Virus record (IMG/VR): IMGVR_UViG_3300028558_000791
Location: 372,001 to 436,000 of that record
DNA: 64,000 nt
Reading direction: 5' to 3' (one strand)
The notes beneath the pieces were generated by a model. It saw only the letters and a program-made list of their open reading frames with translations, made no database searches and had not been told where the DNA came from. Of this stretch, positions 30,644 through 48,413 are shown piece by piece. Each line of letters opens with the position of its first letter. Position 1 is the stretch's first letter. A program made the position numbers and the translations under genes.

Positions 30644-30678
30644 ATGGCGATGACTAAAAATCATCGCCATTTTTATTT
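30644..30678 (+). terminator. Rho-independent terminator
   Basis: ATGGCGATGA-ctaaaaa-TCATCGCCAT followed by TTTTATTT. Confidence 0.75.
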
Positions 30679-30839: not shown

Positions 30840-31721
30840 ATGAAATCGTACAAGATGGTATTTTCTTGGATTTTAATTGTAGCGTTTACGGGTGTTTCTA
30901 CAGATGATAAGGCGGACGGTCTCAAAATTGAGACAAATAAAACAGGTGCTCCGCCAGAAAAAGCGGAAATTTCATGGCGGCGGAACGAAGATCGATCGCA
31001 CGCGTGTCCCAGTGATATGATAGAGGTACAAGGCGATTACTGTACCAATCTAAAGACAGAGTGTTTGTACAATATAGACATGGATGGTACTCGTCATTAC
31101 CCAGGAGATATTAATCTGGCCTGTGGGGAGTATAAAAACCCTAGCACATGTCTATCAGATAAGCTAGTACATTTACATTTCTGTATAGATAAATACGAAT
31201 GGCCCAATAAACCAGGTACAGTCCCTCAAGATTGGATGACTTATTTCGATGCAGAGAAGGCTGTAAACTCTGTAGGTAAGCGCCTGTGTACCCATAAAGA
31301 ATGGACGCTGGCGGCAGAAGGCCCCAACACACATCCACTACCGTATGGAGATGGTTTCCATCGTGATAGTAAGATTTGTAACTTCGATAACCATAATCCA
31401 AACATTGACGTATTCCAATCCAAAAATCCTAACGATGAGACTTCAGCTAAGCTTCGTGCCCTATTAGTTCCTTCTGGATCTATGGCGAGTTGTGTGAGCG
31501 ATTATGGTGTACATGATATGTCAGGTAACATCGATGAATGGGTTGTCAATGAAAGTAGTCAAGATATGTGTATTAGTAAAACTACTGGTAACTGTAAGAG
31601 TGGTCTAATGGGCGGTCATATCTGGCATGTACGTAATGCTAGTCGCCCCATGACTACTGCTCATGGTGCAGGATTCAGTTGGTATGAAACGGGCGCTAGA
31701 GCCTGTAAGGATGTTCAATGA
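30840..31721 (+). CDS. Secreted FGE-sulfatase (SUMF1) domain protein, myxobacterial type
   Basis: Signal peptide; CPSDM..V.GDYC, FCIDKYEWPN, GKRLCT..EW, YGVHDMSGNIDEW, GARAC. Confidence 0.85.
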   Translation: MKSYKMVFSWILIVAFTGVSTDDKADGLKIETNKTGAPPEKAEISWRRNEDRSHACPSDMIEVQGDYCTNLKTECLYNIDMDGTRHYPGDINLACGEYKNPSTCLSDKLVHLHFCIDKYEWPNKPGTVPQDWMTYFDAEKAVNSVGKRLCTHKEWTLAAEGPNTHPLPYGDGFHRDSKICNFDNHNPNIDVFQSKNPNDETSAKLRALLVPSGSMASCVSDYGVHDMSGNIDEWVVNESSQDMCISKTTGNCKSGLMGGHIWHVRNASRPMTTAHGAGFSWYETGARACKDVQ

Positions 31722-32374
31722 ATCTTCGAGAGTTCATTGACCAACGTACCAACTGCCCTATTTGTGATACTGCACTAGTAACACAGTTCATTTCTAATCG
31801 CAAGCAAAAAGTAAAGCTAATAGATAATAGATTTGTGGCAATTTTTGTAATGAAGGCATTGCGAGTTAATCAGCCAGACTATGAGATAGGCTACTCGTTT
31901 GATATGGATAGCAACCATTTCATGGTTGAGTTCTATTCAGAGTGGGATCACTACGAGCAAGTACCCATGCACCTAATAGATAAGTTCAAAGAGTTCCATA
32001 AGAACATGGGAGGATGTAAGTTCTATAGACGATGTACTTTCTGTAATAGGTATAGTAAAAGCTCTACGCCTTTCAGCCTTAATTTCAAGACCCAGAAGAT
32101 GGATACTGAATTGTGGGATGGTATAGAGGTAGCCTATGAATCGTTTGGCTTATCTTTGCCTACCGATGGAGGCTTCAAGATAATGCACCTGAGTAACTTT
32201 CATATACTGGAGCCCAAATCGAACCTGATCTGGTACCGCGCTGACTCAGAGATGTATGCCCGTTTAGACTATACACTACCTAATGCCCGTTCTGAAAAGA
32301 CATTGTCCTTCATTCCATTTGTTTCCAAAGAAGAAACAACAAAGAGGCTGAATAACCTAATAACTTTTGCTTAA
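31718..32374 (+). CDS. CxxC / C-terminal-tail array protein (long type)
   Basis: CPIC; ends KRLNNLITFA. Confidence 0.8.
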   Translation: MNLREFIDQRTNCPICDTALVTQFISNRKQKVKLIDNRFVAIFVMKALRVNQPDYEIGYSFDMDSNHFMVEFYSEWDHYEQVPMHLIDKFKEFHKNMGGCKFYRRCTFCNRYSKSSTPFSLNFKTQKMDTELWDGIEVAYESFGLSLPTDGGFKIMHLSNFHILEPKSNLIWYRADSEMYARLDYTLPNARSEKTLSFIPFVSKEETTKRLNNLITFA

Positions 32375-32937
32375 AGGAATGCAGATAGTTTCTTAACAGC
32401 CTGCATCCAACGCACAATCTCTACTGCAGTATCGATTGGTATGTTGGTGCCAAAGTTTCCTTGGTCAAAGTACTTCAACCAAGGTCTATTAATAAACCTA
32501 TTATCCTTCACAAAGATCATAGGATAATCAATCTTACAAGGCATTCCAGACGGTGTCTTGGTGCGTTCCTCCCAGACTTCCATGTCTACCGTCATCTGCA
32601 TGCCTTGCTGGCTCGGAACGCCGTTATAGCGCTTGATTCTAATCTTGAATGACCCAACCCTTAGGTTAGTGCATTTGAGAATTTCTTCTTTTATCTTACT
32701 GGATTTGACGGTTGTAAGGTCAATCATGCCGGCCGAGCTAGCTTGATGAATCTTTTGTTTAATTTCAGGTTCAGAAGGTGCCCACTCCATCTTGGTAATA
32801 TCATAATCATCAATAGCCTCATCATATTGTGAGTCTACTAACTTTTGAATGAGTTCCAGGTAATCCTGGTCTGTAAGTGATTTCATGGACATATATTCTT
32901 TAATATATCGCAATATTAATAACTTTGCATTTATCAC
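32371..32937 (-). CDS. Hypothetical protein, paralogue of 37126..37566
   Basis: Shared VGxxxIxI, DxRF...W and terminal LxAFL. Confidence 0.7.
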   Translation of the reverse strand: MINAKLLILRYIKEYMSMKSLTDQDYLELIQKLVDSQYDEAIDDYDITKMEWAPSEPEIKQKIHQASSAGMIDLTTVKSSKIKEEILKCTNLRVGSFKIRIKRYNGVPSQQGMQMTVDMEVWEERTKTPSGMPCKIDYPMIFVKDNRFINRPWLKYFDQGNFGTNIPIDTAVEIVRWMQAVKKLSAFL

Positions 32938-33597
32938 ATGAACCCGAACAAGCTACTTAGATTTGCCAATATGTTCTATTCCCTAGCTGTGGGTGAAGAG
33001 CTGCCATCTGATTCAGATGATTTGAAGGTAGTATTATCGAACATCGAGGGTTTGGAAACTTACAATGCCCGCAAGAATTATGCGGAGCGTAATCTTAAAC
33101 ATTTATCCTCGGGCTCATCGCGCATCGTCTACTTGACACCGAGCAAAACCATCATTAAACTGGCTAAGAATGACAAAGGCATCGCTCAGAATAAGGCGGA
33201 AGCTAATCCTGAGATGAAGTCCAAGTATCTAAACCAAATCATCAGTTCATCCAAAAATGATGCTTGGTTAGAAACCCATTACCTAGATAAGATAACCGAG
33301 AAGGAATTCGAGCAGATGACCGGCCTCAAATTTGAGGATTTCGGAGACTCTCTGCGTTATGGCCTTAAGGACGTATCCGGTAACAAAGATATTGAAAAAC
33401 CTAAAGAGTTTGAGAAGGTATCGAAGACGGACATATATAAGGAGCTACGAGATATCGGTGAACGATTCAAGCTCCTACCTGGTGACATTGCCAGGATTTC
33501 TTCTTGGGGAACCAAAGATGGCCGCCCCATCCTAATTGATGCTGGATTGACACGAGATATCTTCGATGAATTCTACGAAGACTCTGCATCCTCATGA
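32938..33597 (+). CDS. Protein-kinase-like fold enzyme
   Basis: GSSRIVY Gly-loop, IIKLAK, QNxxE, GD...WG, LIDAG. Confidence 0.65.
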   Translation: MNPNKLLRFANMFYSLAVGEELPSDSDDLKVVLSNIEGLETYNARKNYAERNLKHLSSGSSRIVYLTPSKTIIKLAKNDKGIAQNKAEANPEMKSKYLNQIISSSKNDAWLETHYLDKITEKEFEQMTGLKFEDFGDSLRYGLKDVSGNKDIEKPKEFEKVSKTDIYKELRDIGERFKLLPGDIARISSWGTKDGRPILIDAGLTRDIFDEFYEDSASS

Positions 33598-34187
33598 AAC
33601 AATTTAAGAACCTATTCGAAGTACTTCAATACCATTCTAAGTGTCCTTTCTGCTCCGGCAAGATGTCGACAGGATGGGATATGGCTTATGATGAGAATTC
33701 GATTAAAGCTTATCTCAAGTTTGGATTAACAACTCTAACTGTTGATTGCTATAACAATAACATTATAGAATGCCGTCAAACATCTAGCTATAATTACCTA
33801 CCCGCTATTGGAGGTATGGTAAGTCAATACGTAGGCTCATCTTTATCTGATCTTTCGTCTAAAGGTATTGATATCCGCCGTCTGAACATATCTTGTGATG
33901 TTTGCAGTAAGTATTCTTATTTGATTCAAGTACATATTTCACTTGAGCACGGCAAACTTATAGCGTTAGTTCTTAATTCAGAGTCCGCTTCAATTGAAGA
34001 GGGCACTAAATTGTATGAGATTAAGAACATCTATACAACCGAAAAGACAGAAATGTCCACGTTTCATACTCACCTCTCCAGTGCGAGAGGCGCACTAGAC
34101 AAGGTAGAGCTTCCGCTCGTTCCTCTGGACCTTCAGAATCCACTGAAGACTGTAGGGCGTATCAAGAATCTCCTCGTATTTTTGTGA
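33594..34187 (+). CDS. CxxC / C-terminal-tail array protein (long type)
   Basis: CPFC; ends GRIKNLLVFL. Confidence 0.8.
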   Translation: MKQFKNLFEVLQYHSKCPFCSGKMSTGWDMAYDENSIKAYLKFGLTTLTVDCYNNNIIECRQTSSYNYLPAIGGMVSQYVGSSLSDLSSKGIDIRRLNISCDVCSKYSYLIQVHISLEHGKLIALVLNSESASIEEGTKLYEIKNIYTTEKTEMSTFHTHLSSARGALDKVELPLVPLDLQNPLKTVGRIKNLLVFL

Positions 34188-34191
34188 AGAC

Positions 34192-34812
34192 ATGACAGAT
34201 AAATTTGAGTCCATCCTTGAGTTTACCAAACTCAAGGAGGAATGTGTATTTTGTAAAACACCATTACGTGCCCACTTAACTAATTTCGTTGGCCTTAATG
34301 AAGTTGGTTTAGCAATCATTAATGCTCCCCTAAAAGATAGTAGGATTGATTTCAAGATAGAACATACTACACCATCCTTTAAAATCAATGCTGATGTTTT
34401 TATCGATGCTACTAAAAATGTCCTTATATTTGATAACTACACTAATGGCGAATTGCCAGCCATAGATGATCATGTAATCAAGCAAACCTTTGAGGATTAT
34501 AGGCCCTATATGGAGCTTTATTGTCCTAGCAAGAAATGTGGTTTGAACTATCACCTATGTGGGCATTATATAAAGCTGAAGAAAGTTCATCCTGTCCAAG
34601 GTATGTGGTCAGTTCAGCCATTTAAACTTCTTCTAGAAGGTGTAAGAGTTAAGAATTATGTTATCCATAATGATTGGCATGGTCAGAAGACACGCATCTA
34701 TTCTAGGAACAATTCAGATGCGAAACCTATTGAGATAGCCTTAGTAGACTTCACTACTATGGATAAACAAAAATTAATAACACGAATACAAACGATAGTA
34801 ACATTCTCATGA
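34192..34812 (+). CDS. CxxC / C-terminal-tail array protein (long type)
   Basis: CVFC; ends [10 protein letters not shown]. Confidence 0.8.
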
Positions 34813-35903
34813 ATACCATACAACTAATATACGCCTGCCAAGAAAAGATCAAAGCTCTGGGCACAATGATTCCAGAGGCACAGCACCGTAGGCGCTTGGA
34901 AGAAATAGATGAGATAGTCAGTACCAATCCTAACCTATGGAATGATACTCGCAAAGCTGCTGCCCTAATGAAGGAGCGCACTAAGCTTGCAGACCTTTTA
35001 AGCAAACTAAAGTCTTTCCAAGAACAGGCCGCTTTCAATGCGGAGTTTGCGCAGTTAGCAGGTAATGAAATTGATACTATGTTTGATGATGTCCAACGCC
35101 TCCTTCAAGAGATGACGGATATGGAATTCAAACAGATGATGCAGGACCCTGTAGACGATACTCCTGCCATCATCTCTATTAATGCTGGTGCTGGCGGTCT
35201 AGAGGCAGCTAACTGGGTTACAATGCTATTGCGTATGTATATGCGATATGCCGATAGCCAAGATTTCAAAGTAGAGTTGCTTGACGAGAAGCCATCTGAA
35301 GAACACAGCTCTATTTGTACTGACTCTGTTTCTATTAGAGTAGATGGCCCATATGCTTATGGTTTCTTCAAGTCTGAGTCGGGAGTTCATCGTCTTATTC
35401 GTAATTCTCCATTCAATGCTGCCGATGCAAGACAGACATCATTTGCTGGTGTTCAAGTCTCGCCCGATATTGAAGATACAATTGACATTGTTATCAATGA
35501 TAAGGATATTGAGATTACAGCACAGACAGCAGGTGGCCCAGGAGGACAGAACGTTAATAAGGTGGCCAGTGCTATCAGATTGAAACACATACCAACTGGT
35601 ATTAATATTCTAGTTAGAACGGAACGAGATCAATTATCTAATAAGAAAACAGCTTTGAAGATGCTTAAGGCTCGCTTGTATGATATCGAAATGAAAAAGA
35701 AGCAAGCCGAGATGGATAAGCATATAGCATCTATTTCCGAGGTTTCATTTGGCAATCAAATTAGGACTTATACATTGACCCCTTATCAATTAGTAAAGGA
35801 TGAGCGTACTGGGTTTAAAACTAATGATGCTGATAGTATGTTAGATGGTGACATTCAAGGATTTATGATTGCCTACCTACAGGAATATGATAAAATCGCA
35901 TAA
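34809..35903 (+). CDS. prfB: Peptide chain release factor 2 homologue
   Basis: AGAGG.EA..W..ML.RMY, ESGVHRL, SPF (RF2-specific tripeptide), [17 protein letters not shown]; uninterrupted ORF. Confidence 0.92.
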
Positions 35904-35908
35904 GGAGT

Positions 35909-36493
35909 ATGAGGAAGTTCACCATCAAGGACTTCATAACGTACAATAATCCTTGTTTCAGTTGTGGTAATCAAATCAATTTTCGTATTGGGTTTCTGGA
36001 TTTAGAGACCAAGGCGGACATCTCATACTTGCGCCCCGTGGTTACCCCTACCTATACAGAGGTAGATTTAATCATCAAATACGCCAATACTGACGCTCTA
36101 AAGCTCTACATCTTCCATAAAACTAATAAAATACTAACTAATAGTCAGCAGGGGTTGACAAAGTATCTAGCCAGCCGTAAGTTGTTCTTATCAACTACAT
36201 GTGATAGGTGCTATACGCAGATAGAAAGCCAGTATTTAGATTTCAATATCGATAAGGGTTATGTAGCGGCCGTTGGCATTAGCACTGAGAGGCTAATGGT
36301 ACATGATGGGGATAGCGTATACCAGATTACTTCACATTTTATGGCAGAGAAAAGTAATCTGATTGTTGATAGACTTGACAAAATCAGACCACTTTCACCA
36401 TTTCAATTAGAATTGCCATTGATACCAAAATACAGATTTAAGGATAAGGCGCACTTCATCCAGAAAATGAAGACGTATATAACATTTTCATGA
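35909..36493 (+). CDS. CxxC / C-terminal-tail array protein (long type)
   Basis: CFSC; ends QKMKTYITFS. Confidence 0.8.
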   Translation: MRKFTIKDFITYNNPCFSCGNQINFRIGFLDLETKADISYLRPVVTPTYTEVDLIIKYANTDALKLYIFHKTNKILTNSQQGLTKYLASRKLFLSTTCDRCYTQIESQYLDFNIDKGYVAAVGISTERLMVHDGDSVYQITSHFMAEKSNLIVDRLDKIRPLSPFQLELPLIPKYRFKDKAHFIQKMKTYITFS

Positions 36494-37131
36494 ATTTACA
36501 AGAGATATTGAGCTACCGAGACAGTTGCCTGATATGTGACCGTCCGCTGGTCATGCGAATCAAGGAATATCCTAAACTCTCTATAACTCAGAATGATGAA
36601 GGACTCCAGATACGCTCAGGACATAAAGATGGCGTTCGTCTAAGCTTTGGTTTTGATGGTAAGTATGAGCGTAACAAGCGTGACTACAAGATTCATGCTG
36701 GTCCGGTCTTTATTCAGAAGCGCTGTCAATACCATCCATTGCGCGGCATGCACGTCACTGCCCCAGGTAATGGTAAAATTATCCTCAAGTCACGTAGCGT
36801 CGGGTTAACCACCATGACTAACTTTGGTACCACCTTAGATAGTCTAAAGGACCAGACCTGTCAGTATGGCTTTACCCTATTTGGAGATATCCAGGGTAAC
36901 TATGATGTTAATCTGACAACGGACTTTGTCTATTGGCATGATGACAAAGAGTTCTGGCATGTAAATACTTACTTCACATCGTCATATACTCAGGTTTATC
37001 ACTCAACATTTGAGAATACGATAGACGATGTAATACGAACAAGACTGCAAATTCCAGCAGTTAACCTAAAGAACGTAACCGGCGTACCTCAGTTACTAGA
37101 GAAACTTAAGCTGTATACACTCTTCTCATAA
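36490..37131 (+). CDS. CxxC / C-terminal-tail array protein (long type)
   Basis: CLIC; ends EKLKLYTLFS. Confidence 0.8.
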   Translation: MNLQEILSYRDSCLICDRPLVMRIKEYPKLSITQNDEGLQIRSGHKDGVRLSFGFDGKYERNKRDYKIHAGPVFIQKRCQYHPLRGMHVTAPGNGKIILKSRSVGLTTMTNFGTTLDSLKDQTCQYGFTLFGDIQGNYDVNLTTDFVYWHDDKEFWHVNTYFTSSYTQVYHSTFENTIDDVIRTRLQIPAVNLKNVTGVPQLLEKLKLYTLFS

Positions 37132-37566
37132 GAATGCTTTGAGTCGGTCTAGCCTCTTACAGTAACAGACGGCATCCAATAGATGCTTCATCTTAAGGTT
37201 ACCGAAAGAGTTATGTAAAACCCACTCCTGCCCTTTGAATCTAGAATCTCTCTTAAGGTCAATGCGCTTAGCCTTGGGTTCTAAACTATCATAAATAGCA
37301 ATCTCGAAATCTTTGAATTCTTTTAGCTTGCGAGGGCCGACTAAATCATATGGTAATTGAATCTTGATACTGTACATACCAACTTTAATGGTGTTACGAT
37401 AGAGAGTAATCTCGTTCTCTTTAGCTTCTTCCAAGCTTGCTAAACTACAATGGTCTAACTCGCGCTTTATCTTGTTTTTCGAACTCTTACCGTGACTGAA
37501 ATCGAGTACGATACGAGGTTCTTCATGTGATCGAATGGCTGTCATACTTCCTTGATAGTATGCCAT
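37126..37566 (-). CDS. Hypothetical protein, paralogue of 32371..32937
   Basis: Ends RLDRLKAFL. Confidence 0.7.
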   Translation of the reverse strand: MAYYQGSMTAIRSHEEPRIVLDFSHGKSSKNKIKRELDHCSLASLEEAKENEITLYRNTIKVGMYSIKIQLPYDLVGPRKLKEFKDFEIAIYDSLEPKAKRIDLKRDSRFKGQEWVLHNSFGNLKMKHLLDAVCYCKRLDRLKAFL

Positions 37567-37584
37567 ATACTTGCCATGTTATAG

Positions 37585-37911
37585 GTGTCCATCATGGAAA
37601 AATTTGATTGTCTGGTATGTAATAAAGAGATGGAGATGCATCATAAAATCATGTACATTGACTACTCATGTAATCGATCAGATGATCATCACTTCTCTTG
37701 GCGTATTAAAGACAATAGACTAGTTAAGCTTCGCATTCGGTTTCAAGATAATAGCGAGCGGCTATGTTTGAAAATTCATTATGATGAACAATACTCTGAG
37801 GTATGGTCTAAGTCTGCTAATAGGATACGTATCAATCAAGTGGTCATTCCTAACTTCCAAAATATAGAAGTGCTGAAAAACAAGATTAGAACTATGCTGG
37901 TGTTTGGATGA
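37585..37911 (+). CDS. CxxC / C-terminal-tail array protein
   Basis: CLVC; ends NKIRTMLVFG. Confidence 0.8.
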   Translation: MSIMEKFDCLVCNKEMEMHHKIMYIDYSCNRSDDHHFSWRIKDNRLVKLRIRFQDNSERLCLKIHYDEQYSEVWSKSANRIRINQVVIPNFQNIEVLKNKIRTMLVFG

Positions 37912-38237
37912 AACCGCCCATCAATTGCCCCGTATGTGGCGACCCATTACTTAATACTTTTCCACCCGCTGAAGACCTCAACACACGAGTTACCAAAACA
38001 TGCACTCGTCGAATTAACCACAATATAGTAATACTAGTTGAAGATGATGAGGTAACTCAATTAGCTATTGATATTGGTAATGGGCTTCAAGCTGTATGGC
38101 TATTCCTATTAGGAGCCGTATGGATTCAAGGTATGAAAAAGGATAAGGAAGTGATGGTGCTTCCATTTTTCGAACCCGATCTATCCAACTATAAAAAGCT
38201 GGTTGAGAAAGTAAAAACTTATCTGGTCTTCTCATAA
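37908..38237 (+). CDS. CxxC / C-terminal-tail array protein
   Basis: CPVC; ends EKVKTYLVFS. Confidence 0.8.
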   Translation: MKPPINCPVCGDPLLNTFPPAEDLNTRVTKTCTRRINHNIVILVEDDEVTQLAIDIGNGLQAVWLFLLGAVWIQGMKKDKEVMVLPFFEPDLSNYKKLVEKVKTYLVFS

Positions 38238-38269
38238 AGGAGTGGTATGGGCGCAGTTATATACTTTGT

Positions 38270-38635
38270 ATGGATGACGTCCTGAACTGCCCGATTTGTG
38301 GTAATAAATTAAGAACAAGCCACCATACAAATAAACACATTTACTTCATCGATCAGACTGGTGATTATACTGAGCGTATCTGCTCAAAAGGTCACAATCA
38401 TATCGTTGACATGTGGGTTAATAAGGCCACGAAACAAGTAGATTTCCTTAGGTTGTCCCTCAACTCAAAGTATTCTCGTTTTTTGGAGATTGATTACGTA
38501 AACCAAAAGTGTCGCATCTCCTGCGTCAAAGATGGTGAGTACGAGTATATCAACGTTCCTAAGATGATTGAACCAGACTTCCCTGATTTAGAAAAACTAA
38601 AAGAACGTGTAAGCCTCTACGTAGTATTCTCATGA
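38270..38635 (+). CDS. CxxC / C-terminal-tail array protein
   Basis: CPIC; ends ERVSLYVVFS. Confidence 0.8.
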   Translation: MDDVLNCPICGNKLRTSHHTNKHIYFIDQTGDYTERICSKGHNHIVDMWVNKATKQVDFLRLSLNSKYSRFLEIDYVNQKCRISCVKDGEYEYINVPKMIEPDFPDLEKLKERVSLYVVFS

Positions 38636-38964
38636 ATTGTCTATTCTGTAAACAAGATATGAATGTTGGTGAAAGAACCAAACTTGATTTCTTCTATCGG
38701 TATACCTGTTACTCAATTGAGTGTATGGTTAATAATGATTTCCCTAGATACATTTGCGGAACTGATAAAGAAGGTAGTGTATGTTGGCAAGAGTATGCTT
38801 TAGGCAGCTTCTATGTCAAAGTTAGTGACAATGGCTGTCTTATCTATAGATTAGAGAGCTGTATGCTAACTAATGAGATTAAGATAGCTAGACCTTTATG
38901 GCTCAATCCTACAAATTTCGACCACACGCTTGACAAGCTAAAGCTGATGGTTACATTCTCCTGA
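38632..38964 (+). CDS. CxxC / C-terminal-tail array protein
   Basis: CLFC; ends DKLKLMVTFS. Confidence 0.8.
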   Translation: MNCLFCKQDMNVGERTKLDFFYRYTCYSIECMVNNDFPRYICGTDKEGSVCWQEYALGSFYVKVSDNGCLIYRLESCMLTNEIKIARPLWLNPTNFDHTLDKLKLMVTFS

Positions 38965-38982
38965 AGATAGGGAATAAACTAA

Positions 38983-39327
38983 ATGCGATTCGCGACCCAT
39001 GAATGTCCTCTGTGCAATAATGTTCTCCAAATAAAACTAATGTCCGGAGTAACTACCTACTTCTGTCCAACTAAGATTACAGATGGTAATAACAATATTT
39101 CGCACTATGAAGTAGAGACAGATGGCAAACAAACCATTCAGCATCTCTATGTCTTCCCATATGCTATTGATAACTTTGCCAACGCAGGTAAGTCACGGGT
39201 TTATCTATGGGGAGAAACTAAGTGGCAGTTCCTAATGGAACTTCCTTTTGTCACAGCTCAACCACAAGAAAGTTTGCTGGACCACCTTTACAATGTGGCC
39301 CCTCCATCCTATGACATTGCTATGTAA
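38983..39327 (+). CDS. CxxC array protein lacking the conserved tail
   Basis: CPLC...YFCP; ends PSYDIAM. Confidence 0.75.
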   Translation: MRFATHECPLCNNVLQIKLMSGVTTYFCPTKITDGNNNISHYEVETDGKQTIQHLYVFPYAIDNFANAGKSRVYLWGETKWQFLMELPFVTAQPQESLLDHLYNVAPPSYDIAM

Positions 39328-39679
39328 GTTTTGCCAAGAAGAAGCTGCCTACGTTCCGCTCATCATTAAGGGCGGTAATGGAGATAATAATTTTCATACA
39401 TTCGATGTTCACTATTGCTATAATTGCGCAGCAGAATACGTCAAATGGTCAAGCTCCAATAGCATTCATCTATATACTATCATCAATACTAGAACGTATA
39501 GATGGACATTGAATGAAGGTGGAGCTACTGCTTATCTGTGGTATGTAGGAGAGCCAGGAGAACCAGGAGTGCGCCCCAATAGGAAGATGAAGCTGGTCAA
39601 GACATTCAGTGAACACTTCCCGCCAATCACTCCAGAAAACATAGAACGTAAACTCCGCTTCATGCTATTATTTTTATGA
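39311..39679 (+). CDS. CxxC / C-terminal-tail array protein (start reassigned to MTLLCKFC)
   Basis: CKFC, CYNC; ends RKLRFMLLFL. Confidence 0.8.
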   Translation: MTLLCKFCQEEAAYVPLIIKGGNGDNNFHTFDVHYCYNCAAEYVKWSSSNSIHLYTIINTRTYRWTLNEGGATAYLWYVGEPGEPGVRPNRKMKLVKTFSEHFPPITPENIERKLRFMLLFL

Positions 39680-40200
39680 GAAAAATCGAAATACTACAGT
39701 ACTCTTGCCCTCAATGCAATGCTGACCTGATAGTTAAAGCCGTTGACTTTTTATATAATCAAATGGATGGAGAAAAGACTAAAACATCATACCAGTGTAT
39801 AGGATGCCGAGAAGAGTTCTACTCATTGGAACAAGCGCATGTATCTAATACTAGCCTGACGCCTGAATACAAATGTCCCTACTGCCACCAGCAATGCTCC
39901 TATCTATCCCTTAAGGACGATTGGACTGATTACTGGAAGTGCTTACCATGTAAGGTAGCGTTTCAACAAACTTATAGTGCTAACTTTGCTGGTATCGATA
40001 CTATCAACATGTACACTACCATCAAAGGCAAGCTATTTGTATTGAGACAGTTCCTCAGAGAGAATCGGTCCAGAATAGATATGTTACCAGAAGACCCAGA
40101 GGATACGATTGTAATCGCTAAGGATTTCAATTTCCTGTTCCCTAATCTGCTGCCATCTAACATCCAAGAGAAACTCCTAACCTATCTTGTATTCTCATGA
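39676..40200 (+). CDS. CxxC / C-terminal-tail array protein with two Zn ribbons
   Basis: CPQC, CIGC, CPYC, CLPC; ends EKLLTYLVFS. Confidence 0.8.
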   Translation: MRKIEILQYSCPQCNADLIVKAVDFLYNQMDGEKTKTSYQCIGCREEFYSLEQAHVSNTSLTPEYKCPYCHQQCSYLSLKDDWTDYWKCLPCKVAFQQTYSANFAGIDTINMYTTIKGKLFVLRQFLRENRSRIDMLPEDPEDTIVIAKDFNFLFPNLLPSNIQEKLLTYLVFS

Positions 40201-40535
40201 ACTGTGAATTCTGTAAGAAGCCATTGCGCTTCTCTCATAACGAAAATGATAAAGATATTGAGGTATATGATTGCAATCATTGCCCCGTCCTAACTTCATT
40301 TCACTACCTTCACAAAGATGGTAGCCCAGTCAAGACCACGTTCATGATAGATAAGAATGAGAAGTGTTATCTGTGGACCAACAACTACATCCAGAATATC
40401 TCCTACATTCATGACTTGGGAACATCTATAGCTAGGGAAGGAAAAGACCCAATGATTCTCAAGTTCCCTAAAATTATGAATGTCAATCCAACTAACATTC
40501 ATGAGAAGTTCGCTTTCTATATGGTATTCCTATGA
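40197..40535 (+). CDS. CxxC / C-terminal-tail array protein
   Basis: CEFC, CNHC; ends EKFAFYMVFL. Confidence 0.8.
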   Translation: MNCEFCKKPLRFSHNENDKDIEVYDCNHCPVLTSFHYLHKDGSPVKTTFMIDKNEKCYLWTNNYIQNISYIHDLGTSIAREGKDPMILKFPKIMNVNPTNIHEKFAFYMVFL

Positions 40536-40945
40536 AGCCATTGCAGAACTGTCCATATTGCGGATGTTATCTATCTCGCATCAAACAGAACGAGAGCTGG
40601 CATGAGACCTATTGTTCTGACCGATGCTCCATGAAGTACCATCAGTATTTTGAAGGAGATTTCGATAGCGATAAGCTAAGGTATATCACGTTTGATACGC
40701 CCCGATTCAACGTCTACGTCTATTTTGAGACAGGGTTCTATCCTAATATCGTACACTTCTACTCTCATAAAGAGATGGCCGCTAAGGGAACAGCTATGCC
40801 AATAGTGGATAACTTGCCGTCAAGCAGGATTCCAACCCATGAACTAGAAGAGATGGCTAACTCTCGATATGAGACGGCCACCCAAGCACGGGAATGGTTG
40901 GACAAGGTAGATGAGAAGCTTCATACTCTAGCGTTATTCGCATGA
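40532..40945 (+). CDS. CxxC / C-terminal-tail array protein
   Basis: CPYC; ends EKLHTLALFA. Confidence 0.8.
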   Translation: MKPLQNCPYCGCYLSRIKQNESWHETYCSDRCSMKYHQYFEGDFDSDKLRYITFDTPRFNVYVYFETGFYPNIVHFYSHKEMAAKGTAMPIVDNLPSSRIPTHELEEMANSRYETATQAREWLDKVDEKLHTLALFA

Positions 40946-41274
40946 TCTGTCCATCTTGTGCTAAAGAAATCGGCCGCCCCAAAATGCACACGGCCACGTT
41001 TACTTGCAGTTACTATTGTATGTCATGTAAAGAAGAACATATCGTTTGGGAATCTATTACTCCAGGAGACTATGTAGTCGAGTGGGATAGGTATCGCATT
41101 TACTGCAACACTAAAGATAACACCGCCAAACTTCAAAAGATTTACATGGATATTGAATCAGATACCTCAATTATGTATCGATGGTACACCGTCCTAGAAC
41201 TACCCAATATCCCAGAGAATCTGACGCAAGATACCGCAGAAGAAAAGATTAAACTGTATTTGTTATTCTCATGA
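40942..41274 (+). CDS. CxxC / C-terminal-tail array protein
   Basis: CPSC, CMSC; ends EKIKLYLLFS. Confidence 0.8.
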   Translation: MICPSCAKEIGRPKMHTATFTCSYYCMSCKEEHIVWESITPGDYVVEWDRYRIYCNTKDNTAKLQKIYMDIESDTSIMYRWYTVLELPNIPENLTQDTAEEKIKLYLLFS

Positions 41275-41663
41275 AATGCTATTACTGCCAAAATGAAGTA
41301 GAACAAGACCCAGATAATAGCCCTGGTCCATTCAAAAGCCTGCGGTCCAAATCCTGTGATCACTGTACCAAAACTCATGATATCTATCATGTCTCGTTCA
41401 TCTATGAAACTGATGGTAGTTATCGGTACGCTCATATCTATTTGGATGAGGTAACATATACTACACTCCCAAAGACAGGATTCTCTAATCGCGGTCTAGT
41501 AATAGCTGACAACGAAACCTATCATATTAGATTGAATATGAAGGCAGGAAATACCAGCGTCATGCTATATGGAACGACGGAAGAGATTCTATGCCTACCA
41601 ACTCTTAACATCACTCCCGCCAATGTGCGCGAGAAGATTAAACTCTACCTATTATTCTCATGA
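41271..41663 (+). CDS. CxxC / C-terminal-tail array protein
   Basis: CYYC, CDHC; ends EKIKLYLLFS. Confidence 0.8.
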   Translation: MKCYYCQNEVEQDPDNSPGPFKSLRSKSCDHCTKTHDIYHVSFIYETDGSYRYAHIYLDEVTYTTLPKTGFSNRGLVIADNETYHIRLNMKAGNTSVMLYGTTEEILCLPTLNITPANVREKIKLYLLFS

Positions 41664-42001
41664 AATGTCCTATCTGTGAAGAACATGAACTAGTCACGCA
41701 ATCTCTAGAAGATTGCTATGGCCGGGCTCCAGATGTCTTCTGCCCCAAAGTCATTAGGTTGCCAGATGGTAAGATTGTCAATCATTACCGAGAGTATCCT
41801 GTGGTGGGCGATAAAACAAGAATCTTTGTTTGGCCCTTTAGAGTCATCACCTGGAAAGGCGAGTCTCAGGTTTCAGTAGATTCTCAATATAAGAGATCTA
41901 AAAAGCACTACTTTAAAACAGTTATGAGGATCCCAGCTTTGCATACAGATAAAGAAGATAAACTAAGGGATCGTATCAAGCTATTGATTCTATTATCATG
42001 A
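41660..42001 (+). CDS. CxxC / C-terminal-tail array protein
   Basis: CPIC; ends DRIKLLILLS. Confidence 0.8.
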   Translation: MKCPICEEHELVTQSLEDCYGRAPDVFCPKVIRLPDGKIVNHYREYPVVGDKTRIFVWPFRVITWKGESQVSVDSQYKRSKKHYFKTVMRIPALHTDKEDKLRDRIKLLILLS

Positions 42002-42372
42002 TGAACTGTAGATTTTGCCAGGCTCCAATGCTTCCCAATGAAGATGTTATACCTGACTCAGATACTCAATATTCACACTGCACTTGGGAATGTCATAACT
42101 GTCCAGCTACCGTTAGGCAAAAGAATGAACAACAAGATTGGTTTGCTATTCTGGCCTTTTATAATGGTTATTGGTTTGAAGTCATGCAGATGTATACAGA
42201 AAAGGGAAGCAAAGATCCACCGTTACTATCCATCTATAAACTAACCCCTTACATTAATGATGTTTATGAAGATGCTGTTAAATCAGAGTTTGTCATGGAG
42301 TTGAATGTTAATGGTAACATCACTCCCCAAAACATTAAAGATAAACTGGCCGTCATCCTAACCTTCTCATGA
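41998..42372 (+). CDS. CxxC / C-terminal-tail array protein
   Basis: CRFC, CHNC; ends DKLAVILTFS. Confidence 0.8.
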   Translation: MMNCRFCQAPMLPNEDVIPDSDTQYSHCTWECHNCPATVRQKNEQQDWFAILAFYNGYWFEVMQMYTEKGSKDPPLLSIYKLTPYINDVYEDAVKSEFVMELNVNGNITPQNIKDKLAVILTFS

Positions 42373-42701
42373 TTAACTGTCCATTTTGTAACGCCCAACT
42401 CCGAATCCAAATGTATCAATCCGATTGCAAGGATTGCCAGGTTAACTTCATATCCAGACAAACTGGCCACACATTAGATTCCCCTTGGCATACTTACTAC
42501 TACACCTTTAAGTTTAGAGATGATACCTATCATGCTCTCAATATAGATTTTGAAAAGCAAATCACCACAGTTTGGTTGGTCAATCCCAATTCACCATTAC
42601 ACCAAACTCCATTGCATATTCCTAGAGTCTTCCCAGATACTAATCCTAATAACGCATTAACATTAGCTAGAAAACTACACCACCTAATTGCCTTCACCTA
42701 A
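42369..42701 (+). CDS. CxxC / C-terminal-tail array protein
   Basis: CPFC, CKDC; ends RKLHHLIAFT. Confidence 0.8.
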   Translation: MINCPFCNAQLRIQMYQSDCKDCQVNFISRQTGHTLDSPWHTYYYTFKFRDDTYHALNIDFEKQITTVWLVNPNSPLHQTPLHIPRVFPDTNPNNALTLARKLHHLIAFT

Positions 42702-42759
42702 GCGGCAACACACTCCATTCCGATCTAACCGCCCCAATTCGCGCATGAATCCCTATCTC

Positions 42760-43044
42760 ATGAACTGTCATTACTGTAACCAAATCTGTGAATGCAATGT
42801 CTCCAGTTGGATTTGTCGTAAATGTGGCGCCGAATTTTTCGATGGACATATTAATCTGTATACCGTCATCAATGAAAAACATTATACTTTCCAAATGAGA
42901 TTCGAACATACAGAATTCCCCGCCCGTATCCTGGGAGGACCAATAAGTCAACTGAAACGAATTATCAACCTCCCCAAAATACCTGATAACATCACTCCGT
43001 CCAACGTCAATGAAAAGGTCAGACTATATCTGCTGTTCTCATGA
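42760..43044 (+). CDS. CxxC / C-terminal-tail array protein (start reassigned to MNCHYC)
   Basis: CHYC, CRKC; ends EKVRLYLLFS. Confidence 0.8.
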   Translation: MNCHYCNQICECNVSSWICRKCGAEFFDGHINLYTVINEKHYTFQMRFEHTEFPARILGGPISQLKRIINLPKIPDNITPSNVNEKVRLYLLFS

Positions 43045-43412
43045 TTACCTGCCCCTTCTGCGATAAGCCAGTCCACCTATCCAAGGACGAACGAGACTCC
43101 AATTCTCTGTTGGCTGATACAGATACCGATGACTTCTACTGCCCAACCTATGTAGACACCGCCCCAGGTAGACGCCAGTGCCACTACCAACGCACGACTA
43201 GACAAGGCTGGTATCCAGATTACCACGCCATCATCCCGCCCTTTAGAATCCACTACGTAGAGGGTGAAAGCATTACCGTCTTTACCATAGAGCCCGGCGA
43301 AAACTCCGATATAACCACCTTCAACCTTATCTACGAAGACAAAGTCAACCCAACCTTTGAAGCCTTTGTCAAAATGTATCACCGATTCAAAACCCTCCGA
43401 GCCTTCATATGA
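43041..43412 (+). CDS. CxxC / C-terminal-tail array protein
   Basis: CPFC; ends HRFKTLRAFI. Confidence 0.8.
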   Translation: MITCPFCDKPVHLSKDERDSNSLLADTDTDDFYCPTYVDTAPGRRQCHYQRTTRQGWYPDYHAIIPPFRIHYVEGESITVFTIEPGENSDITTFNLIYEDKVNPTFEAFVKMYHRFKTLRAFI

Positions 43413-43798
43413 TTACCACTCTGAAATGCCATCAGTGCAATAAAGAACTAACTCAGATTGACTGGGATGTCCCAGATGTCGGCCCAATCCCCAATCCAAA
43501 GACCACCATGACCCTGGAATGCCCTGACGTCCATTGCCGTGTTGTCTATGATAAAGAACTCCAGAACATCACCGAGTATACCATCTTCTTCGAAGACGCT
43601 ATCCAACGTAGATATAAAGTCAATGGCTTCCGCCATAACAAATCAACCCACTTCATGGTCAAAAACGGACCCAAACCCTGGAACTACCAAACCGCCCTGC
43701 AAATCAAACGCTTCCTGGCATTCAAACCAAATAAAGAAGGCCAACTGCAAGGCGAAGCTATCTTCCGGAAACTTAAAACCCTACTAACATTCTCATGA
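43409..43798 (+). CDS. CxxC / C-terminal-tail array protein
   Basis: CHQC; ends RKLKTLLTFS. Confidence 0.8.
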   Translation: MITTLKCHQCNKELTQIDWDVPDVGPIPNPKTTMTLECPDVHCRVVYDKELQNITEYTIFFEDAIQRRYKVNGFRHNKSTHFMVKNGPKPWNYQTALQIKRFLAFKPNKEGQLQGEAIFRKLKTLLTFS

Positions 43799-44154
43799 GC
43801 GATCCAACTTGCCGTTTCTGCCATCGTCGTATGACCTGGAGCTGTACCCATATCCCAACTCATATCTCAACTGGTCCCTACAAAGACGAGCAGGTGGATA
43901 GCTACTCTTGTGGTTACTGTGCCTCAGAACAAGACTTCCTAGAAACAGGACAGCCAGCAAGCTATTACTTTATGGTCGGTGCCTATAAACTATGCTTCTA
44001 TCCCCATAACCAAACCTTCCAAGTTAGACACTATCCACAAGGTAGATTAAGTGAGCACATCACCATCGTCATGACTCTCAACTACCTGCCCCATAATCTA
44101 ACCCCATCAACTGTGACTGTGGATAGACTAAAGACACTAATCGTATTCTCATGA
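43795..44154 (+). CDS. CxxC / C-terminal-tail array protein
   Basis: CRFC, CGYC; ends DRLKTLIVFS. Confidence 0.8.
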   Translation: MSDPTCRFCHRRMTWSCTHIPTHISTGPYKDEQVDSYSCGYCASEQDFLETGQPASYYFMVGAYKLCFYPHNQTFQVRHYPQGRLSEHITIVMTLNYLPHNLTPSTVTVDRLKTLIVFS

Positions 44155-44513
44155 ACCCTAAATGTCGATTCTGTAATGGCAAGCAAGAAAACAGCGGTTT
44201 TAAAAGAGAAAACAATATGACTATGTACCGGTACAGATGTAATACCTGTCTGATAGAACAAACTTACCATCCCGATGGCTCTTTGCTAGAAGCTACTTTG
44301 CGTATCCCCATAGATAGAAACACCAAATTTAATCATGGCATGTTCCATTACGTAATAGACTTCAATCCAACTACTATGAACCTAAAGGTAAGAAGTTACG
44401 GCGAAGAATGCGGCTGGAAAGAACACTTCAACGTTAAAGTCACCAACCAGCCCGATTGGTTTAATCCATCTCTTTCAGAAGAAAAACTCAAACTGTATAT
44501 ACTATTCTCATGA
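44151..44513 (+). CDS. CxxC / C-terminal-tail array protein
   Basis: CRFC, CNTC; ends EKLKLYILFS. Confidence 0.8.
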   Translation: MNPKCRFCNGKQENSGFKRENNMTMYRYRCNTCLIEQTYHPDGSLLEATLRIPIDRNTKFNHGMFHYVIDFNPTTMNLKVRSYGEECGWKEHFNVKVTNQPDWFNPSLSEEKLKLYILFS

Positions 44514-44833
44514 ACTGTCTCTTCTGCCAAAAACCTTGCTCCAACAATAGAATCGAATCCCAGCACTATTGCCTGCCTTGCTATGCCACCTTCTTCTACG
44601 AAAATGATATCCTTAACTTCATCGAACTCTGGGTCCAAATTAAAGATCGTAAATACATCGTCAGGCTATGGCAAGAATCCAAAACAACTGAACTAAAACA
44701 AACTAATCCCGTCGATCCCAATAACCTACAAGCAGGTTATTTTCATGAAGTTGTGCTAACTCTAGATTACTTAGCAAATGTCTCCCCAAGTAATATCGAA
44801 TCTAAAGTACAAACTATGTTGACTTTCCTATGA
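44510..44833 (+). CDS. CxxC / C-terminal-tail array protein
   Basis: CLFC, CLPC; ends SKVQTMLTFL. Confidence 0.8.
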   Translation: MNCLFCQKPCSNNRIESQHYCLPCYATFFYENDILNFIELWVQIKDRKYIVRLWQESKTTELKQTNPVDPNNLQAGYFHEVVLTLDYLANVSPSNIESKVQTMLTFL

Positions 44834-45156
44834 TTTGTCGTTATTGCAATCAACCATGTCGCCTAATCACAAAAGGCTCTTTGCCCGATGGACTGGCAGA
44901 AAACAGAATCGCCCACTGCGACCCATGCAATGTCAAATACTTCGATAGATTCCATGTCCTGGTCTGCAATATCAAAGATACCGAATACTCCGTCTCCTAT
45001 ATGGATGACCACCCAAACCACTGGACTTCTATCTACCAATACAACAAAAAGGAAAGGCCCAGGGTGCATGATATCGCCCTGAGCTTCCAATTCCATGTTA
45101 GGTTCACCCCAGCTAACTTCAAAGAAAAGCTAAAGATATACCTGCTGTTCAGTTAG
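44830..45156 (+). CDS. CxxC / C-terminal-tail array protein
   Basis: CRYC, CDPC; ends EKLKIYLLFS. Confidence 0.8.
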   Translation: MICRYCNQPCRLITKGSLPDGLAENRIAHCDPCNVKYFDRFHVLVCNIKDTEYSVSYMDDHPNHWTSIYQYNKKERPRVHDIALSFQFHVRFTPANFKEKLKIYLLFS

Positions 45157-45851: not shown

Positions 45852-45874
45852 GATAACACCTAAAATAAGGTTAC

Positions 45875-46777: not shown

Positions 46778-46885
46778 GAAACCCCGACGAGGTTCAGTAG
46801 GCTACCGTACTTGGCAACCCAAGATTACAAAGATACAAGAATACATACCAAACCGTTACTCAAATGTTTCTTATACATTGTATAA

Positions 46886-48396: not shown

Positions 48397-48413
48397 CATC
48401 AGGCGACTCGTCG

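What the first reader, a model, noticed from the sequence alone, without database searches (positions are those of the whole stretch)
31718..45156. Array of 26 hypervariable Zn-ribbon proteins sharing one C-terminal tail (K-L-K-x-Y-L-x-F-S-stop): candidate modular adaptor/effector system
Seen: 26 co-oriented genes of ~95-220 aa, each with an N-terminal CxxC and a middle that I cannot align between neighbours. 25 of them end in an amphipathic [EDR]-[KR]-h-[KR]-x-h-h-x-F-[SLAG] terminus (one ends LS), often preceded by P-x-N. The tail survives with different codons where there is no gene coupling (TTC TCC TGA at 38964, TTC AGT TAG at 45156, TTC TCA TAA at 37131 and 38237), so selection acts on the peptide. 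Inference: a variable recognition domain plus a constant terminal docking helix is the design of substrate-adaptor families (by analogy only, poxvirus ANK-PRANC/F-box proteins). The tail could dock on a common phage or host partner, act as a C-terminal degron or PDZ ligand (Prc/Tsp, FtsH type), or be a capsid-loading/export signal. I know of no described phage family with this layout.
Basis: partly seen in the sequence, partly recalled or inferred. Interest (0 to 1): 0.88.

Follow-up and report, generated by a model that had tools for sequence, protein, structure and literature searches.

The report
Zinc-ribbon paralog array in huge phage
A roughly 480 kb uncultured phage carries a translationally coupled operon of 26 diverged copies of one small zinc-binding protein of unknown function and apparently new fold, and the shared "tail" is most likely the last helix of that fold, not a detachable docking tag.

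Summary
There are 26 co-oriented ORFs, and all have an N-terminal CxxC. 25 end in a [KR]-h-x-x-h-h-x-F-[SL] motif that is kept with different codons.

The interpretation needs changing in four ways:
- The members are homologous end to end (about 22-26% identity). This is one diverged domain, not a variable domain plus a constant tag.
- AlphaFold2 gives a confident compact model (pLDDT 96.8): zinc ribbon, beta-sheet and a C-terminal helix. That helix is the "tail", and T-P-x-N is its N-cap.
- Orthologues in related phages are 37-81% identical and under purifying selection, like their neighbours. The genes are not hypervariable.
- Bacillus phage G has a described, non-homologous expansion with the same layout (gp32-like; Iyer et al. 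2021).

The family is large and uncharacterised. A profile search finds 1,231 clusters at 50% identity. It has no Pfam, PHROGs or NCBIfam family, no PDB fold neighbour, and no copy in GenBank phages or GTDB genomes.

A phage RF2 gene sits inside the module, and this is conserved in related phages.

The most likely function is inferred, not shown: a co-expressed battery of small zinc-stabilised binding proteins with diversified surfaces. A shared docking role for the helix surface is not excluded.

The parts
31718..32374 (+). m1, long member (218 aa), degenerate tail ending ITFA; ATGA-coupled to the upstream gene
   Evidence: the long-member alignment that includes it shares its last ~60 columns with the short family (hhalign prob 94.8%)
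33594..34187 (+). m2, long member (197 aa), tail LLVFL
34192..34812 (+). m3, long member (206 aa), tail IVTFS; ATGA-coupled to RF2
35909..36493 (+). m4, long member (194 aa); about 80 extra residues between the two zinc knuckles
   Evidence: AF2 pLDDT 91.0, pTM 0.84, C-terminal helix 180-192
36490..37131 (+). m5, long member (213 aa), tail YTLFS, TAA stop
   Evidence: family HMM E 0.0033 on its C-terminal half
37585..37911 (+). m6 (108 aa from GTG; alternative ATG at 37594), tail MLVFG
   Evidence: HMM E 3e-13
37908..38237 (+). m7 (109 aa), tail YLVFS, TAA stop
   Evidence: HMM E 8e-8
38270..38635 (+). m8 (121 aa), tail YVVFS; many orthologues in metagenomes
38632..38964 (+). m9 (110 aa), tail MVTFS, TTC TCC TGA
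38983..39327 (+). m10 (114 aa), has CxxC but has lost the tail
   Evidence: tail score -17.6; its L002 orthologue hits the family HMM at positions 4-98
39311..39679 (+). m11 (122 aa from ATG 39311; the listed ORF starts at TTG 39248), tail MLLFL
   Evidence: HMM E 9e-27; start checked
39676..40200 (+). m12 (174 aa): an extra N-terminal zinc ribbon plus the family domain at residues 67-174
   Evidence: two HMM stretches
40197..40535 (+). m13 (112 aa), tail YMVFL
   Evidence: HMM E 1e-25
40532..40945 (+). m14 (137 aa), tail LALFA
40942..41274 (+). m15 (110 aa), tail YLLFS
   Evidence: HMM E 2e-18
41271..41663 (+). m16 (130 aa), tail YLLFS
   Evidence: HMM E 3e-15
41660..42001 (+). m17 (113 aa), tail LILLS (Leu in place of Phe in this member and most orthologues)
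41998..42372 (+). m18 (124 aa), tail ILTFS
   Evidence: HMM E 4e-19
42369..42701 (+). m19 (110 aa), tail LIAFT, TAA stop
   Evidence: HMM E 3e-16
42760..43044 (+). m20 (94 aa from ATG 42760; ORF open from 42688); the member that was modelled
   Evidence: AF2 pLDDT 96.8, pTM 0.87; HMM E 5e-23
43041..43412 (+). m21 (123 aa), degenerate tail LRAFI
   Evidence: HMM E 2.8e-4; tail score 1.8
43409..43798 (+). m22 (129 aa), tail LLTFS
   Evidence: HMM E 2e-12
43795..44154 (+). m23 (119 aa), tail LIVFS
   Evidence: HMM E 6e-18
44151..44513 (+). m24 (120 aa), tail YILFS
   Evidence: HMM E 1e-17
44510..44833 (+). m25 (107 aa), tail MLTFL
   Evidence: HMM E 7e-24
44830..45156 (+). m26 (108 aa), tail YLLFS, TTC AGT TAG; last gene of the operon
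   Evidence: HMM E 2e-21
34809..35903 (+). Class-I release factor RF2 (SPF and GGQ motifs, uninterrupted ORF), embedded in the array and ATGA-coupled to m3
   Evidence: Pfam PCRF 3e-44 and RF-1 6e-33; motifs; same position in L003 and L018
32938..33597 (+). 219-aa non-family gene, ATGA-coupled to m2; most conserved gene of the module
   Evidence: 85% identity to its L003 orthologue; no Pfam or PDB match
32371..32937 (-). Antisense 188-aa gene inside the array, no CxxC, ends KKLSAFL
   Evidence: homologous to 37126-37566 (E 1e-4); unrelated to the family (hhalign prob 0.4%)
37126..37566 (-). Antisense 146-aa paralogue of the gene above, ends DRLKAFL
   Evidence: conserved in L003 and L018
30840..31721 (+). 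First gene of the transcription unit: FGE-sulfatase-domain protein with a hydrophobic N-terminus, ATGA-coupled to m1; terminator-like hairpin upstream at 30642-30672
   Evidence: Pfam 3e-13
45153..47527 (-). Three convergent peptidase genes that close the locus: M10-like (45153-45851), trypsin-like (45875-46777) and C39 (46886-47527)
   Evidence: Pfam; the M10-like and trypsin-like genes also follow the array in L003 and L007/L008

Best explanation
The array is a lineage-specific expansion of one small gene in a clade of uncultured huge phages of about 480-510 kb.

The protein. Each copy encodes a compact, self-contained domain of roughly 95-125 aa. Two CxxC (or C/H) knuckles form a zinc ribbon. 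Next comes a four- to five-stranded sheet with one conserved hydrophobic face. A C-terminal amphipathic helix, N-capped by T-P-x-N, packs on that face. The "tail" is this helix. It is the best conserved segment because, together with the zinc site, it forms the core of the fold.

What varies. The opposite sheet face, the loop between the knuckles and the hairpin loops differ in sequence, length and charge (pI 4.6-9.3).

Long members. Five members (m1-m5) carry about 80 extra residues between the knuckles. m12 carries an extra zinc ribbon.

Expression. The genes are read from one polycistronic message through a chain of ATGA stop/start overlaps. This also fixes the last codon as NNA and the next gene's second codon as ANN. 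The paralogues are therefore made together.

Function (inferred, not shown). No residues are conserved apart from the zinc ligands and the core, so a catalytic role is unlikely. Each paralogue is separately held by purifying selection. They most likely act as stoichiometric binding proteins that each engage a different host or phage macromolecule during infection, for example in host take-over or counter-defence.
For: - Full-length homology among members: BLASTP down to 4e-8 over 108 aa; invariant Cys columns.
- Large family: the profile finds 1,231 clusters at 50% identity, and nearly all of the 150 listed are 90-130 aa and matched end to end.
- Confident models: pLDDT 96.8 and pTM 0.87 for m20, with helix 83-93 inside the domain. 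pLDDT 91.0 for long member m4, which also ends in a helix.
- Conserved hydrophobic positions alternate along the strands (31/33/37, 42/44/46, 55, 68/71), and the positions between them vary.
- Peptide-level selection on the tail.
- Each paralogue keeps its own tail variant in its orthologues: 9.1 of 12 residues identical, against 4.0 of 12 between paralogues. This fits a helix tuned to its own core.
- dN/dS is 0.05-0.21 wherever dS could be computed. Identity is 37-81%, similar to RF2 (69%) and the M10-like peptidase (67%).
- pI ranges from 4.6 to 9.3.
- 20 ATGA overlaps, and the only + strand terminator-like sites inside the array are weak hairpins that lie within coding sequence.
- Fusions are seen only to further zinc ribbons or to a second copy of the domain.
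Against: - The structures are predictions. I had no coordinates, so burial of the helix is inferred from pLDDT and the helical-wheel pattern.
- Helix positions expected to face outward (E/D at -10, K at -7, T at -6, T/V/L at -3) carry 1.7-2.4 bits. Typical surface positions carry 0.3-0.9 bits. That is more conservation than core packing alone needs.
- Lys -9 and Phe -2 are 93-94% invariant across the family.
- There is no direct evidence for any binding partner, expression time or cellular location.
- The host is unknown.
- Only 64 kb of a genome of about 480 kb was examined.
Confidence: 0.55

Rival explanations
1. Modular adaptor system. The conserved face of the C-terminal helix, including the Lys -9 to Phe -2 stripe, is a common docking surface. 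Through it, all co-expressed paralogues plug into one phage or host hub, while the variable sheet face selects different cargo.
For: - Outward-facing helix positions are unusually conserved across paralogues that are otherwise about 20% identical.
- Lys/Arg at -9 is present in 25/25 members and Phe at -2 in 24/25.
- Co-expression from one operon.
- An unrelated phage G family has the same layout with its own conserved C-terminal helix. A conserved terminal helix has therefore been kept in two separate expansions.
Against: - The helix is predicted as an integral part of the fold, not a free peptide.
- The body is homologous too.
- Tails differ between paralogues but are fixed within orthologues. 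One invariant partner would tend to make them uniform.
- No candidate hub was identified.
- No unrelated protein in the window carries the tail.
Confidence: 0.17
2. Nucleic-acid-binding proteins: a battery of zinc-ribbon transcription factors or structural DNA or RNA binders, as Iyer et al. suggested for the phage G zinc-ribbon expansion.
For: - Zinc ribbons often bind nucleic acids (general knowledge).
- Marginal profile matches to Elf1-type ribbons (E 0.004).
- One PHROGs match to a family annotated as DNA binding protein (E 0.006, 1 of 20 members).
- Precedent in the literature (PMC7824862).
- About 27% of relatives have pI above 8.5.
Against: - There is no uniform positive charge: pI ranges from 4.6 to 9.3, and about 28% of relatives are below 6.
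- No recognised DNA-binding domain or fold neighbour.
- All database matches are sub-threshold and confined to the zinc knuckles.
Confidence: 0.15
3. The C-terminus is a degron, a PDZ or protease ligand, or a capsid-loading or export signal, perhaps read by the three peptidases encoded next to the array.
For: - The array is followed by convergent M10-like and trypsin-like peptidase genes in the window, L003 and the more distant L007/L008; a C39 peptidase gene follows them in the window.
- The motif always lies at the extreme C-terminus.
Against: - The M10-like and trypsin-like proteins have lipoprotein-type signal sequences, so they are probably exported. The zinc-ribbon proteins have no signal peptide (reading).
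- No PDZ domain was found in the trypsin-like protein.
- The tail is predicted to be a structured helix.
- The synteny may simply reflect common descent.
Confidence: 0.06
4. The tail is conserved at the nucleotide level, as a signal for termination-reinitiation at the ATGA overlaps.
For: 18 family genes end NNA TGA overlapping the next ATG, and most of these overlapped starts have no Shine-Dalgarno-like motif upstream.
Against: - Synonymous positions vary freely.
- The motif persists at uncoupled ends with other codons (TCC TGA, AGT TAG, TCA TAA).
- Orthologous tails differ at synonymous sites in about half of their identical residues.
- Only the final codon is constrained.
Confidence: 0.02

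Closest known systems
Bacillus phage G gp32-like zinc-ribbon expansion (YP_009015343.1 = gp32; Iyer et al. 2021, PMC7824862)
   Same: - A huge phage of about 0.5 Mb.
- Many clustered paralogues of about 90-120 aa.
- An N-terminal CPxC knuckle plus a second Cys pair, and a variable middle.
- A strongly conserved helix motif at the C-terminus (K-E-N-D-R-Y-L type).
- Function unknown.

   Different: - No detectable homology: only the first knuckle aligns (hhalign prob 15%).
- The tail motif is different.
- The phage G family is confined to phage G among 50,697 phage records. This family is spread over 1,231 metagenomic clusters.
- Phage G proteins were not among the 50 listed fold matches in BFVD.
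Poxvirus ankyrin-PRANC / F-box adaptor families
   Same: A viral multigene family with a conserved C-terminal element and a diversified remainder (general knowledge).
   Different: - In the poxvirus proteins the C-terminal element is a separate domain appended to a repeat array (general knowledge). Here the helix is predicted to be part of one compact domain.
- There is no F-box or PRANC match.
- The host is bacterial.
Trm112 / YbaR-type small zinc-ribbon proteins (the name JGI gives to two relatives)
   Same: A small protein with an N-terminal Cys4 knuckle pair.
   Different: - No Trm112 match in Pfam among the 10 window members at E up to 1, nor among the 25 most-matched families listed for the 143-sequence scan at E up to 0.1.
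- Not among the 50 PDB fold matches listed.
- The JGI name appears to rest on the zinc knuckles alone.
Phage T4 internal proteins with a shared capsid-targeting sequence (from my own knowledge, not tested here)
   Same: Unrelated bodies share a short terminal peptide that directs them to one place.
   Different: - The T4 signal is N-terminal, cleaved, and attached to unrelated proteins.
- Here the element is C-terminal, predicted to be structured, and the bodies are homologous to each other.

Membership tests
The family itself (profile A2; no public name) | Two zinc knuckles (CxxC ... CxxC or C/H) | tested here: met
   C3 and C6 are invariant and C19 and C22 are 99% conserved in 143 sequences. 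All 26 window ORFs have the first CxxC.
The family itself (profile A2; no public name) | Full-length profile match over about 110 positions | tested here: met
   21 window ORFs hit at E of 0.0033 or better, all inside the array. The m1-m5 group matches through its C-terminal ~60 columns. m10 matches through its L002 orthologue. The profile includes 18 window members, so this test is partly circular.
The family itself (profile A2; no public name) | C-terminal helix motif T-P-x-N-h-x-x-K-h-K-T-Y-L-x-F-[SL] | tested here: met
   25 of 26 members have it. In 149 outside relatives, Lys at -9 occurs in 141 and Phe at -2 in 140.
Phage G gp32-like zinc-ribbon expansion | Sequence homology to gp32/gp34/gp35 | tested here: not met
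   hhalign prob 15%, with 13 columns of the first knuckle only. tblastn of two window members finds nothing in phage G.
Phage G gp32-like zinc-ribbon expansion | Layout: N-terminal zinc ribbon, variable middle, conserved C-terminal helix, multicopy in a huge phage | tested here: met
Adaptor with a detachable docking module (ANK-PRANC / F-box type) | The constant element is a separate module appended to non-homologous or repeat bodies | tested here: not met
   The bodies are homologous. The helix is predicted inside a single domain. No F-box or PRANC match.
Adaptor with a detachable docking module (ANK-PRANC / F-box type) | A common partner bound through the constant element | not testable with these tools
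   No multimer prediction or coordinates were available.
Trm112 / YbaR family | Match to the Trm112 profile or fold | tested here: not met
Lar restriction-alleviation proteins (PF14354) | Score at or above Pfam's gathering threshold | tested here: not met
   7 of 143 members match at E up to 0.1, none with E below 0.0026. These are generic zinc-knuckle matches.
C-terminal degron or PDZ ligand | A free, unstructured C-terminal peptide and a cognate PDZ or tail-specific protease | tested here: inconclusive
   The tail is predicted helical with pLDDT about 95. The neighbouring trypsin-like protein shows no PDZ domain. Accessibility of the last two residues is unknown.

The most novel reading that the evidence does not exclude
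The conserved stripe on the C-terminal helix (Lys -9, Thr/Leu -6, Tyr -5, Phe -2) is a shared docking surface. About 25 co-translated paralogues would use it to compete for, or load different cargo onto, one hub. The hub could be a component of the translation apparatus (an RF2 gene is conserved inside the module), a protease, or the capsid. That would make this a phage-encoded combinatorial adaptor system. The independent phage G family would then be a second invention of the same design.
Probability: 0.15. Interest if true: 0.85.

Novelty: new variant of a known kind. Interest (0 to 1): 0.5.

Why it matters
Huge phages are full of unannotated small genes. This work defines one of the larger such families: 1,231 clusters at 50% identity. 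It comes with a confident structural model that has no solved relative, a clear signature, and a conserved genomic module. That module consists of long members, RF2, antisense genes, a coupled chain of short members and convergent peptidase genes.

The family is a ready candidate for a new domain entry and for functional screens such as host take-over, counter-defence and effects on translation.

Cultured Bacillus phage G has an unrelated family with the same layout. This suggests that "zinc ribbon plus conserved terminal helix" is a recurring scaffold for gene expansion in giant phages. It also offers a cultivable system in which the general question could be tested.

The ordinary part is that the eye-catching tail is most likely just the last helix of the fold.

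Tried and rejected
- GenBank phages: megablast of the 15 kb array region and tblastn of m8 and m11 found nothing.
- GTDB genomes: a protein scan found nothing. A back-translated tail pattern gave 5 hits, none of which carries a family member, so they are chance matches.
- Pfam, PHROGs and NCBIfam: only scattered sub-threshold zinc-knuckle matches, to Ima1_N, Elf1, Lar, C1 and one YoeB.
- PDB by sequence profile: generic zinc ribbons only.
- Foldseek against the PDB for both models: best E 1.3 and 0.17, all TM-scores below 0.4.
- BFVD: only uncharacterised "uncultured Caudovirales phage" proteins, which are family members.
- Nucleotide-level explanation of the tail: rejected on the codon data.
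- Tail as a portable motif on unrelated proteins: the two antisense genes end in KAFL-type tails, but they score only -9.1 and -8.4 on the tail matrix (empirical p about 0.012-0.015) and are unrelated to the family. This is not significant.
- Long members as tandem duplicates of the domain: only the first knuckle of the N-terminal half aligns with the family (prob 55%), so this is not shown.
- Recoding of TGA or TAG in the high-GC block: rejected. Read-through frames lack a coding GC3 signal, while short standard-code ORFs have one.
- tRNA and Rfam scans of the window found nothing.
- The promoter scan was uninformative: 61 sites found against 55 expected.
- Literature searches found no description of this family.

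Full report
**What the window is**

The low-GC part of the window (1-48,000, GC about 0.41) belongs to a huge uncultured phage. IMG/VR contig IMGVR_UViG_3300028558_000791 (480,838 bp) is base-for-base identical to window positions 28,270-48,632. Relatives of the array proteins lie on contigs of 476-511 kb from many metagenomes.

The window encodes tail-fibre-like giant proteins, a GMP-reductase-type enzyme, a nucleotide phosphatase and a release factor. Nothing similar exists in 50,697 GenBank phage records. Two scans of one genome per GTDB species also found nothing.

**Checking the observation**

- All 26 ORFs are present, co-oriented, and 94-218 aa long. Each has an N-terminal CxxC.
- 25 end in the motif. 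m17 ends LLS. m10 has no tail.
- The quoted codons are exact.
- A position matrix of the last 12 residues, built only from 148 outside relatives, scores 22 members at about 10 or more. The best of 31 non-family C-termini scores 1.6.
- Synonymous sites in the tail are free, within the array and between orthologues.
- The final codon is an exception. 18 family genes end NNA TGA overlapping the next ATG, and there are 20 ATGA overlaps along the + strand chain.
- The overlap biases the last residue towards Ser, Leu, Ile, Ala or Gly. It biases the second residue of the next protein towards Asn, Lys, Ile or Thr. Ser still occurs at uncoupled ends as TCC, AGT and TCA.

**The middle is not unalignable and the genes are not hypervariable**

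- 27 of 325 member pairs have BLASTP E<1e-3, typically 22-26% identity over the whole length. 20 pairs stay at E<1e-2 once the last 22 residues are removed.
- A 20-member profile finds 1,231 clusters (50% identity representatives) at E of 1e-3 or better among 1.84 billion. Nearly all of the 150 listed are 90-130 aa and matched from position 2 to 111.
- The five long members share the last ~60 profile columns with the short family (hhalign prob 94.8%, E 5e-8).
- Window-versus-L003 orthologues are 37-81% identical. dN/dS is 0.05-0.21 wherever dS is not saturated. Neighbouring genes look the same: RF2 69%, M10-like peptidase 67%, orf277 49%.
- What does change is the repertoire. m19-m26 have no clear orthologues in L003, which carries other paralogues in that part of the array. 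The m10 slot holds a different, tailed member there.

**Structure**

- With a 143-sequence alignment, AlphaFold2 models m20 at mean pLDDT 96.8 and pTM 0.87. The model has short zinc-ribbon strands, four longer strands, and helix 83-93 of 94 residues. The last block has pLDDT 95.
- The tail is therefore predicted to be a helix inside a compact domain.
- The conserved T-P-x-N just before it fits a helix N-cap. This is my reading from general structural knowledge.
- Conserved hydrophobic positions alternate along the strands, and the positions between them are variable. This is what is expected if one sheet face packs on the helix and the other is a free, diversifying surface.
- Long member m4 is also modelled confidently (pLDDT 91.0). 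It has about 80 extra residues between the two knuckles and the same terminal helix. I could not show that the extra part is a duplicate of the domain.
- Neither model has a PDB neighbour: best E 1.3 and 0.17, TM-scores below 0.4.
- BFVD returns only uncharacterised "uncultured Caudovirales phage" proteins at TM 0.75-0.79, which are family members.
- I had no coordinates. Burial of individual helix residues is therefore inferred, not measured.

**What argues for and against a shared docking role**

For a structural role:
- The fold prediction.
- The whole-length homology.
- Each paralogue keeps its own tail variant in its orthologues. On average 9.1 of 12 residues are identical there, against 4.0 of 12 between paralogues.

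For something more than a structural role:
- Lys/Arg at -9 and Phe at -2 are almost invariant.
- Positions expected to face outward carry 1.7-2.4 bits, against 0.3-0.9 bits for other surface positions.

I therefore keep the adaptor idea as a live but minority rival.

**Context**

- The unit starts after a terminator-like hairpin at 30,642-30,672.
- It runs through an FGE-sulfatase-domain gene, m1, a conserved 219-aa gene, m2, m3, RF2, m4 and m5. It then continues through the short members from m6 to m26.
- Two homologous genes lie on the opposite strand.
- Three convergent peptidase genes close the locus.
- The order [quoted passage not shown] is kept in L003. It is also kept in the more distant L018, whose RF2 is 62% identical to the window's.
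- The array is followed by convergent M10-like and trypsin-like peptidase genes in L003. In the more distant L007/L008 the same two genes follow; the trypsin match is on record there, and the first gene is M10-like by size and position only.
- Huge phages are already known to encode release factors (PMC7162821).
- Whether RF2 is functionally tied to an operon whose genes mostly end in UGA (20 of 25) is speculation.

**Comparison with what is known**

No curated family matches. JGI's "Trm112 family" label on two relatives reflects the zinc knuckles only.

The closest described case is in Bacillus phage G:
- gp32 (= YP_009015343.1), gp34, gp35, gp37 and gp46 are 92-118 aa long.
- They have a CPIC knuckle, a second Cys pair, a variable middle and a conserved C-terminal K-E-N-D-R-Y-L helix motif.
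- gp35 has 14 tblastn matches in phage G and none in any other phage record.
- Iyer et al. describe this as a roughly 35-copy zinc-ribbon expansion, and suggest transcription factors or structural DNA binders (PMC7824862).
- It is not detectably homologous to the present family.
- The layout has therefore been described before, but this family has not.

**Verdict**

This is a real, large, uncharacterised family with an apparently new fold, expanded into a coupled operon. The tail is best read as the fold's terminal helix. The function is unknown. I favour a battery of zinc-stabilised binding proteins with diversified surfaces. My confidence is about 0.85 for the structural statement and about 0.4 for the functional one, which I combine to 0.55.

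Noticed in passing
window 34809-35903 (+): A complete RF2-type release factor (SPF and GGQ motifs, no frameshift site) is embedded in the array and ATGA-coupled to m3. It sits in the same place in L003 and L018. Of 31 non-family genes in the window, 18 end in TAA, 13 in TGA and none in TAG. In the array the counts are TGA 20, TAA 4, TAG 1.
   Followed up: partly
window 48001-64000; also L003 from about 18300: GC jumps from about 0.42 to 0.55-0.62 within 250 bases and stays high to the end of the window. The block holds only short standard-code ORFs (some with GC3 of 0.72-0.83) and one weak Prim-Pol match at 60951-61556. There are no tandem repeats, and TGA or TAG recoding is not supported. The same switch follows the peptidase genes in L003, so it is not an assembly artefact of a single contig. 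It may be an acquired island or a resident mobile element.
   Followed up: partly
L009 (Bacillus phage G, JN638751) 26153-28126 and 32804-33106: Phage G gp32/34/35/37/46 form an unrelated paralogue family with the same layout: N-terminal zinc knuckles, a variable middle and a conserved C-terminal K-E-N-D-R-Y-L helix. There are 14 tblastn places in phage G and none in other phage records.
   Followed up: yes
window 32371-32937 (-) and 37126-37566 (-): Two homologous antisense genes inside the array have no CxxC and no family match. They end in KKLSAFL and DRLKAFL, and this ending is conserved in L003 and L018. The resemblance to the family tail is weak (empirical p about 0.012-0.015).
   Followed up: partly
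window 32938-33597 (+): This 219-aa gene is ATGA-coupled to m2 and is the most conserved gene of the module (85% identity to its L003 orthologue). By eye it has kinase-like motifs (a Gly-rich loop, a Lys in IIKLAK, and LIDAG), but it has no Pfam or PDB sequence match.
   Followed up: partly
window 45153-47527 (-): Three convergent peptidase genes follow the array: M10-like and trypsin-like, both with lipoprotein-type signal sequences, and a C39 peptidase. The M10-like and trypsin-like genes follow the array in L003 as well; in L007/L008 a trypsin-like gene and an unannotated gene of M10-like size do.
   Followed up: partly
window 1559-7077 (-) and 15313-19653 (+): Three very large proteins (575, 1260 and 1446 aa) each carry an E1_FCCH-type domain. 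They lie next to Laminin_G_3 proteins and a tail-fibre-like C-terminus (19638-20777). This is probably the fibre or receptor-binding module.
   Followed up: no
P0116 and P0120 (metagenomic relatives); window 39676-40200: Some relatives are tandem fusions of two copies of the domain. In these, the internal copy keeps the T-P-capped helix but loses the terminal Y-L-x-F-S. m12 and its orthologues instead carry an extra N-terminal zinc ribbon.
   Followed up: partly
L007 5583-5942: A distant relative of this phage encodes a ribosomal protein L12-domain gene a few kb from its zinc-ribbon array.
   Followed up: no
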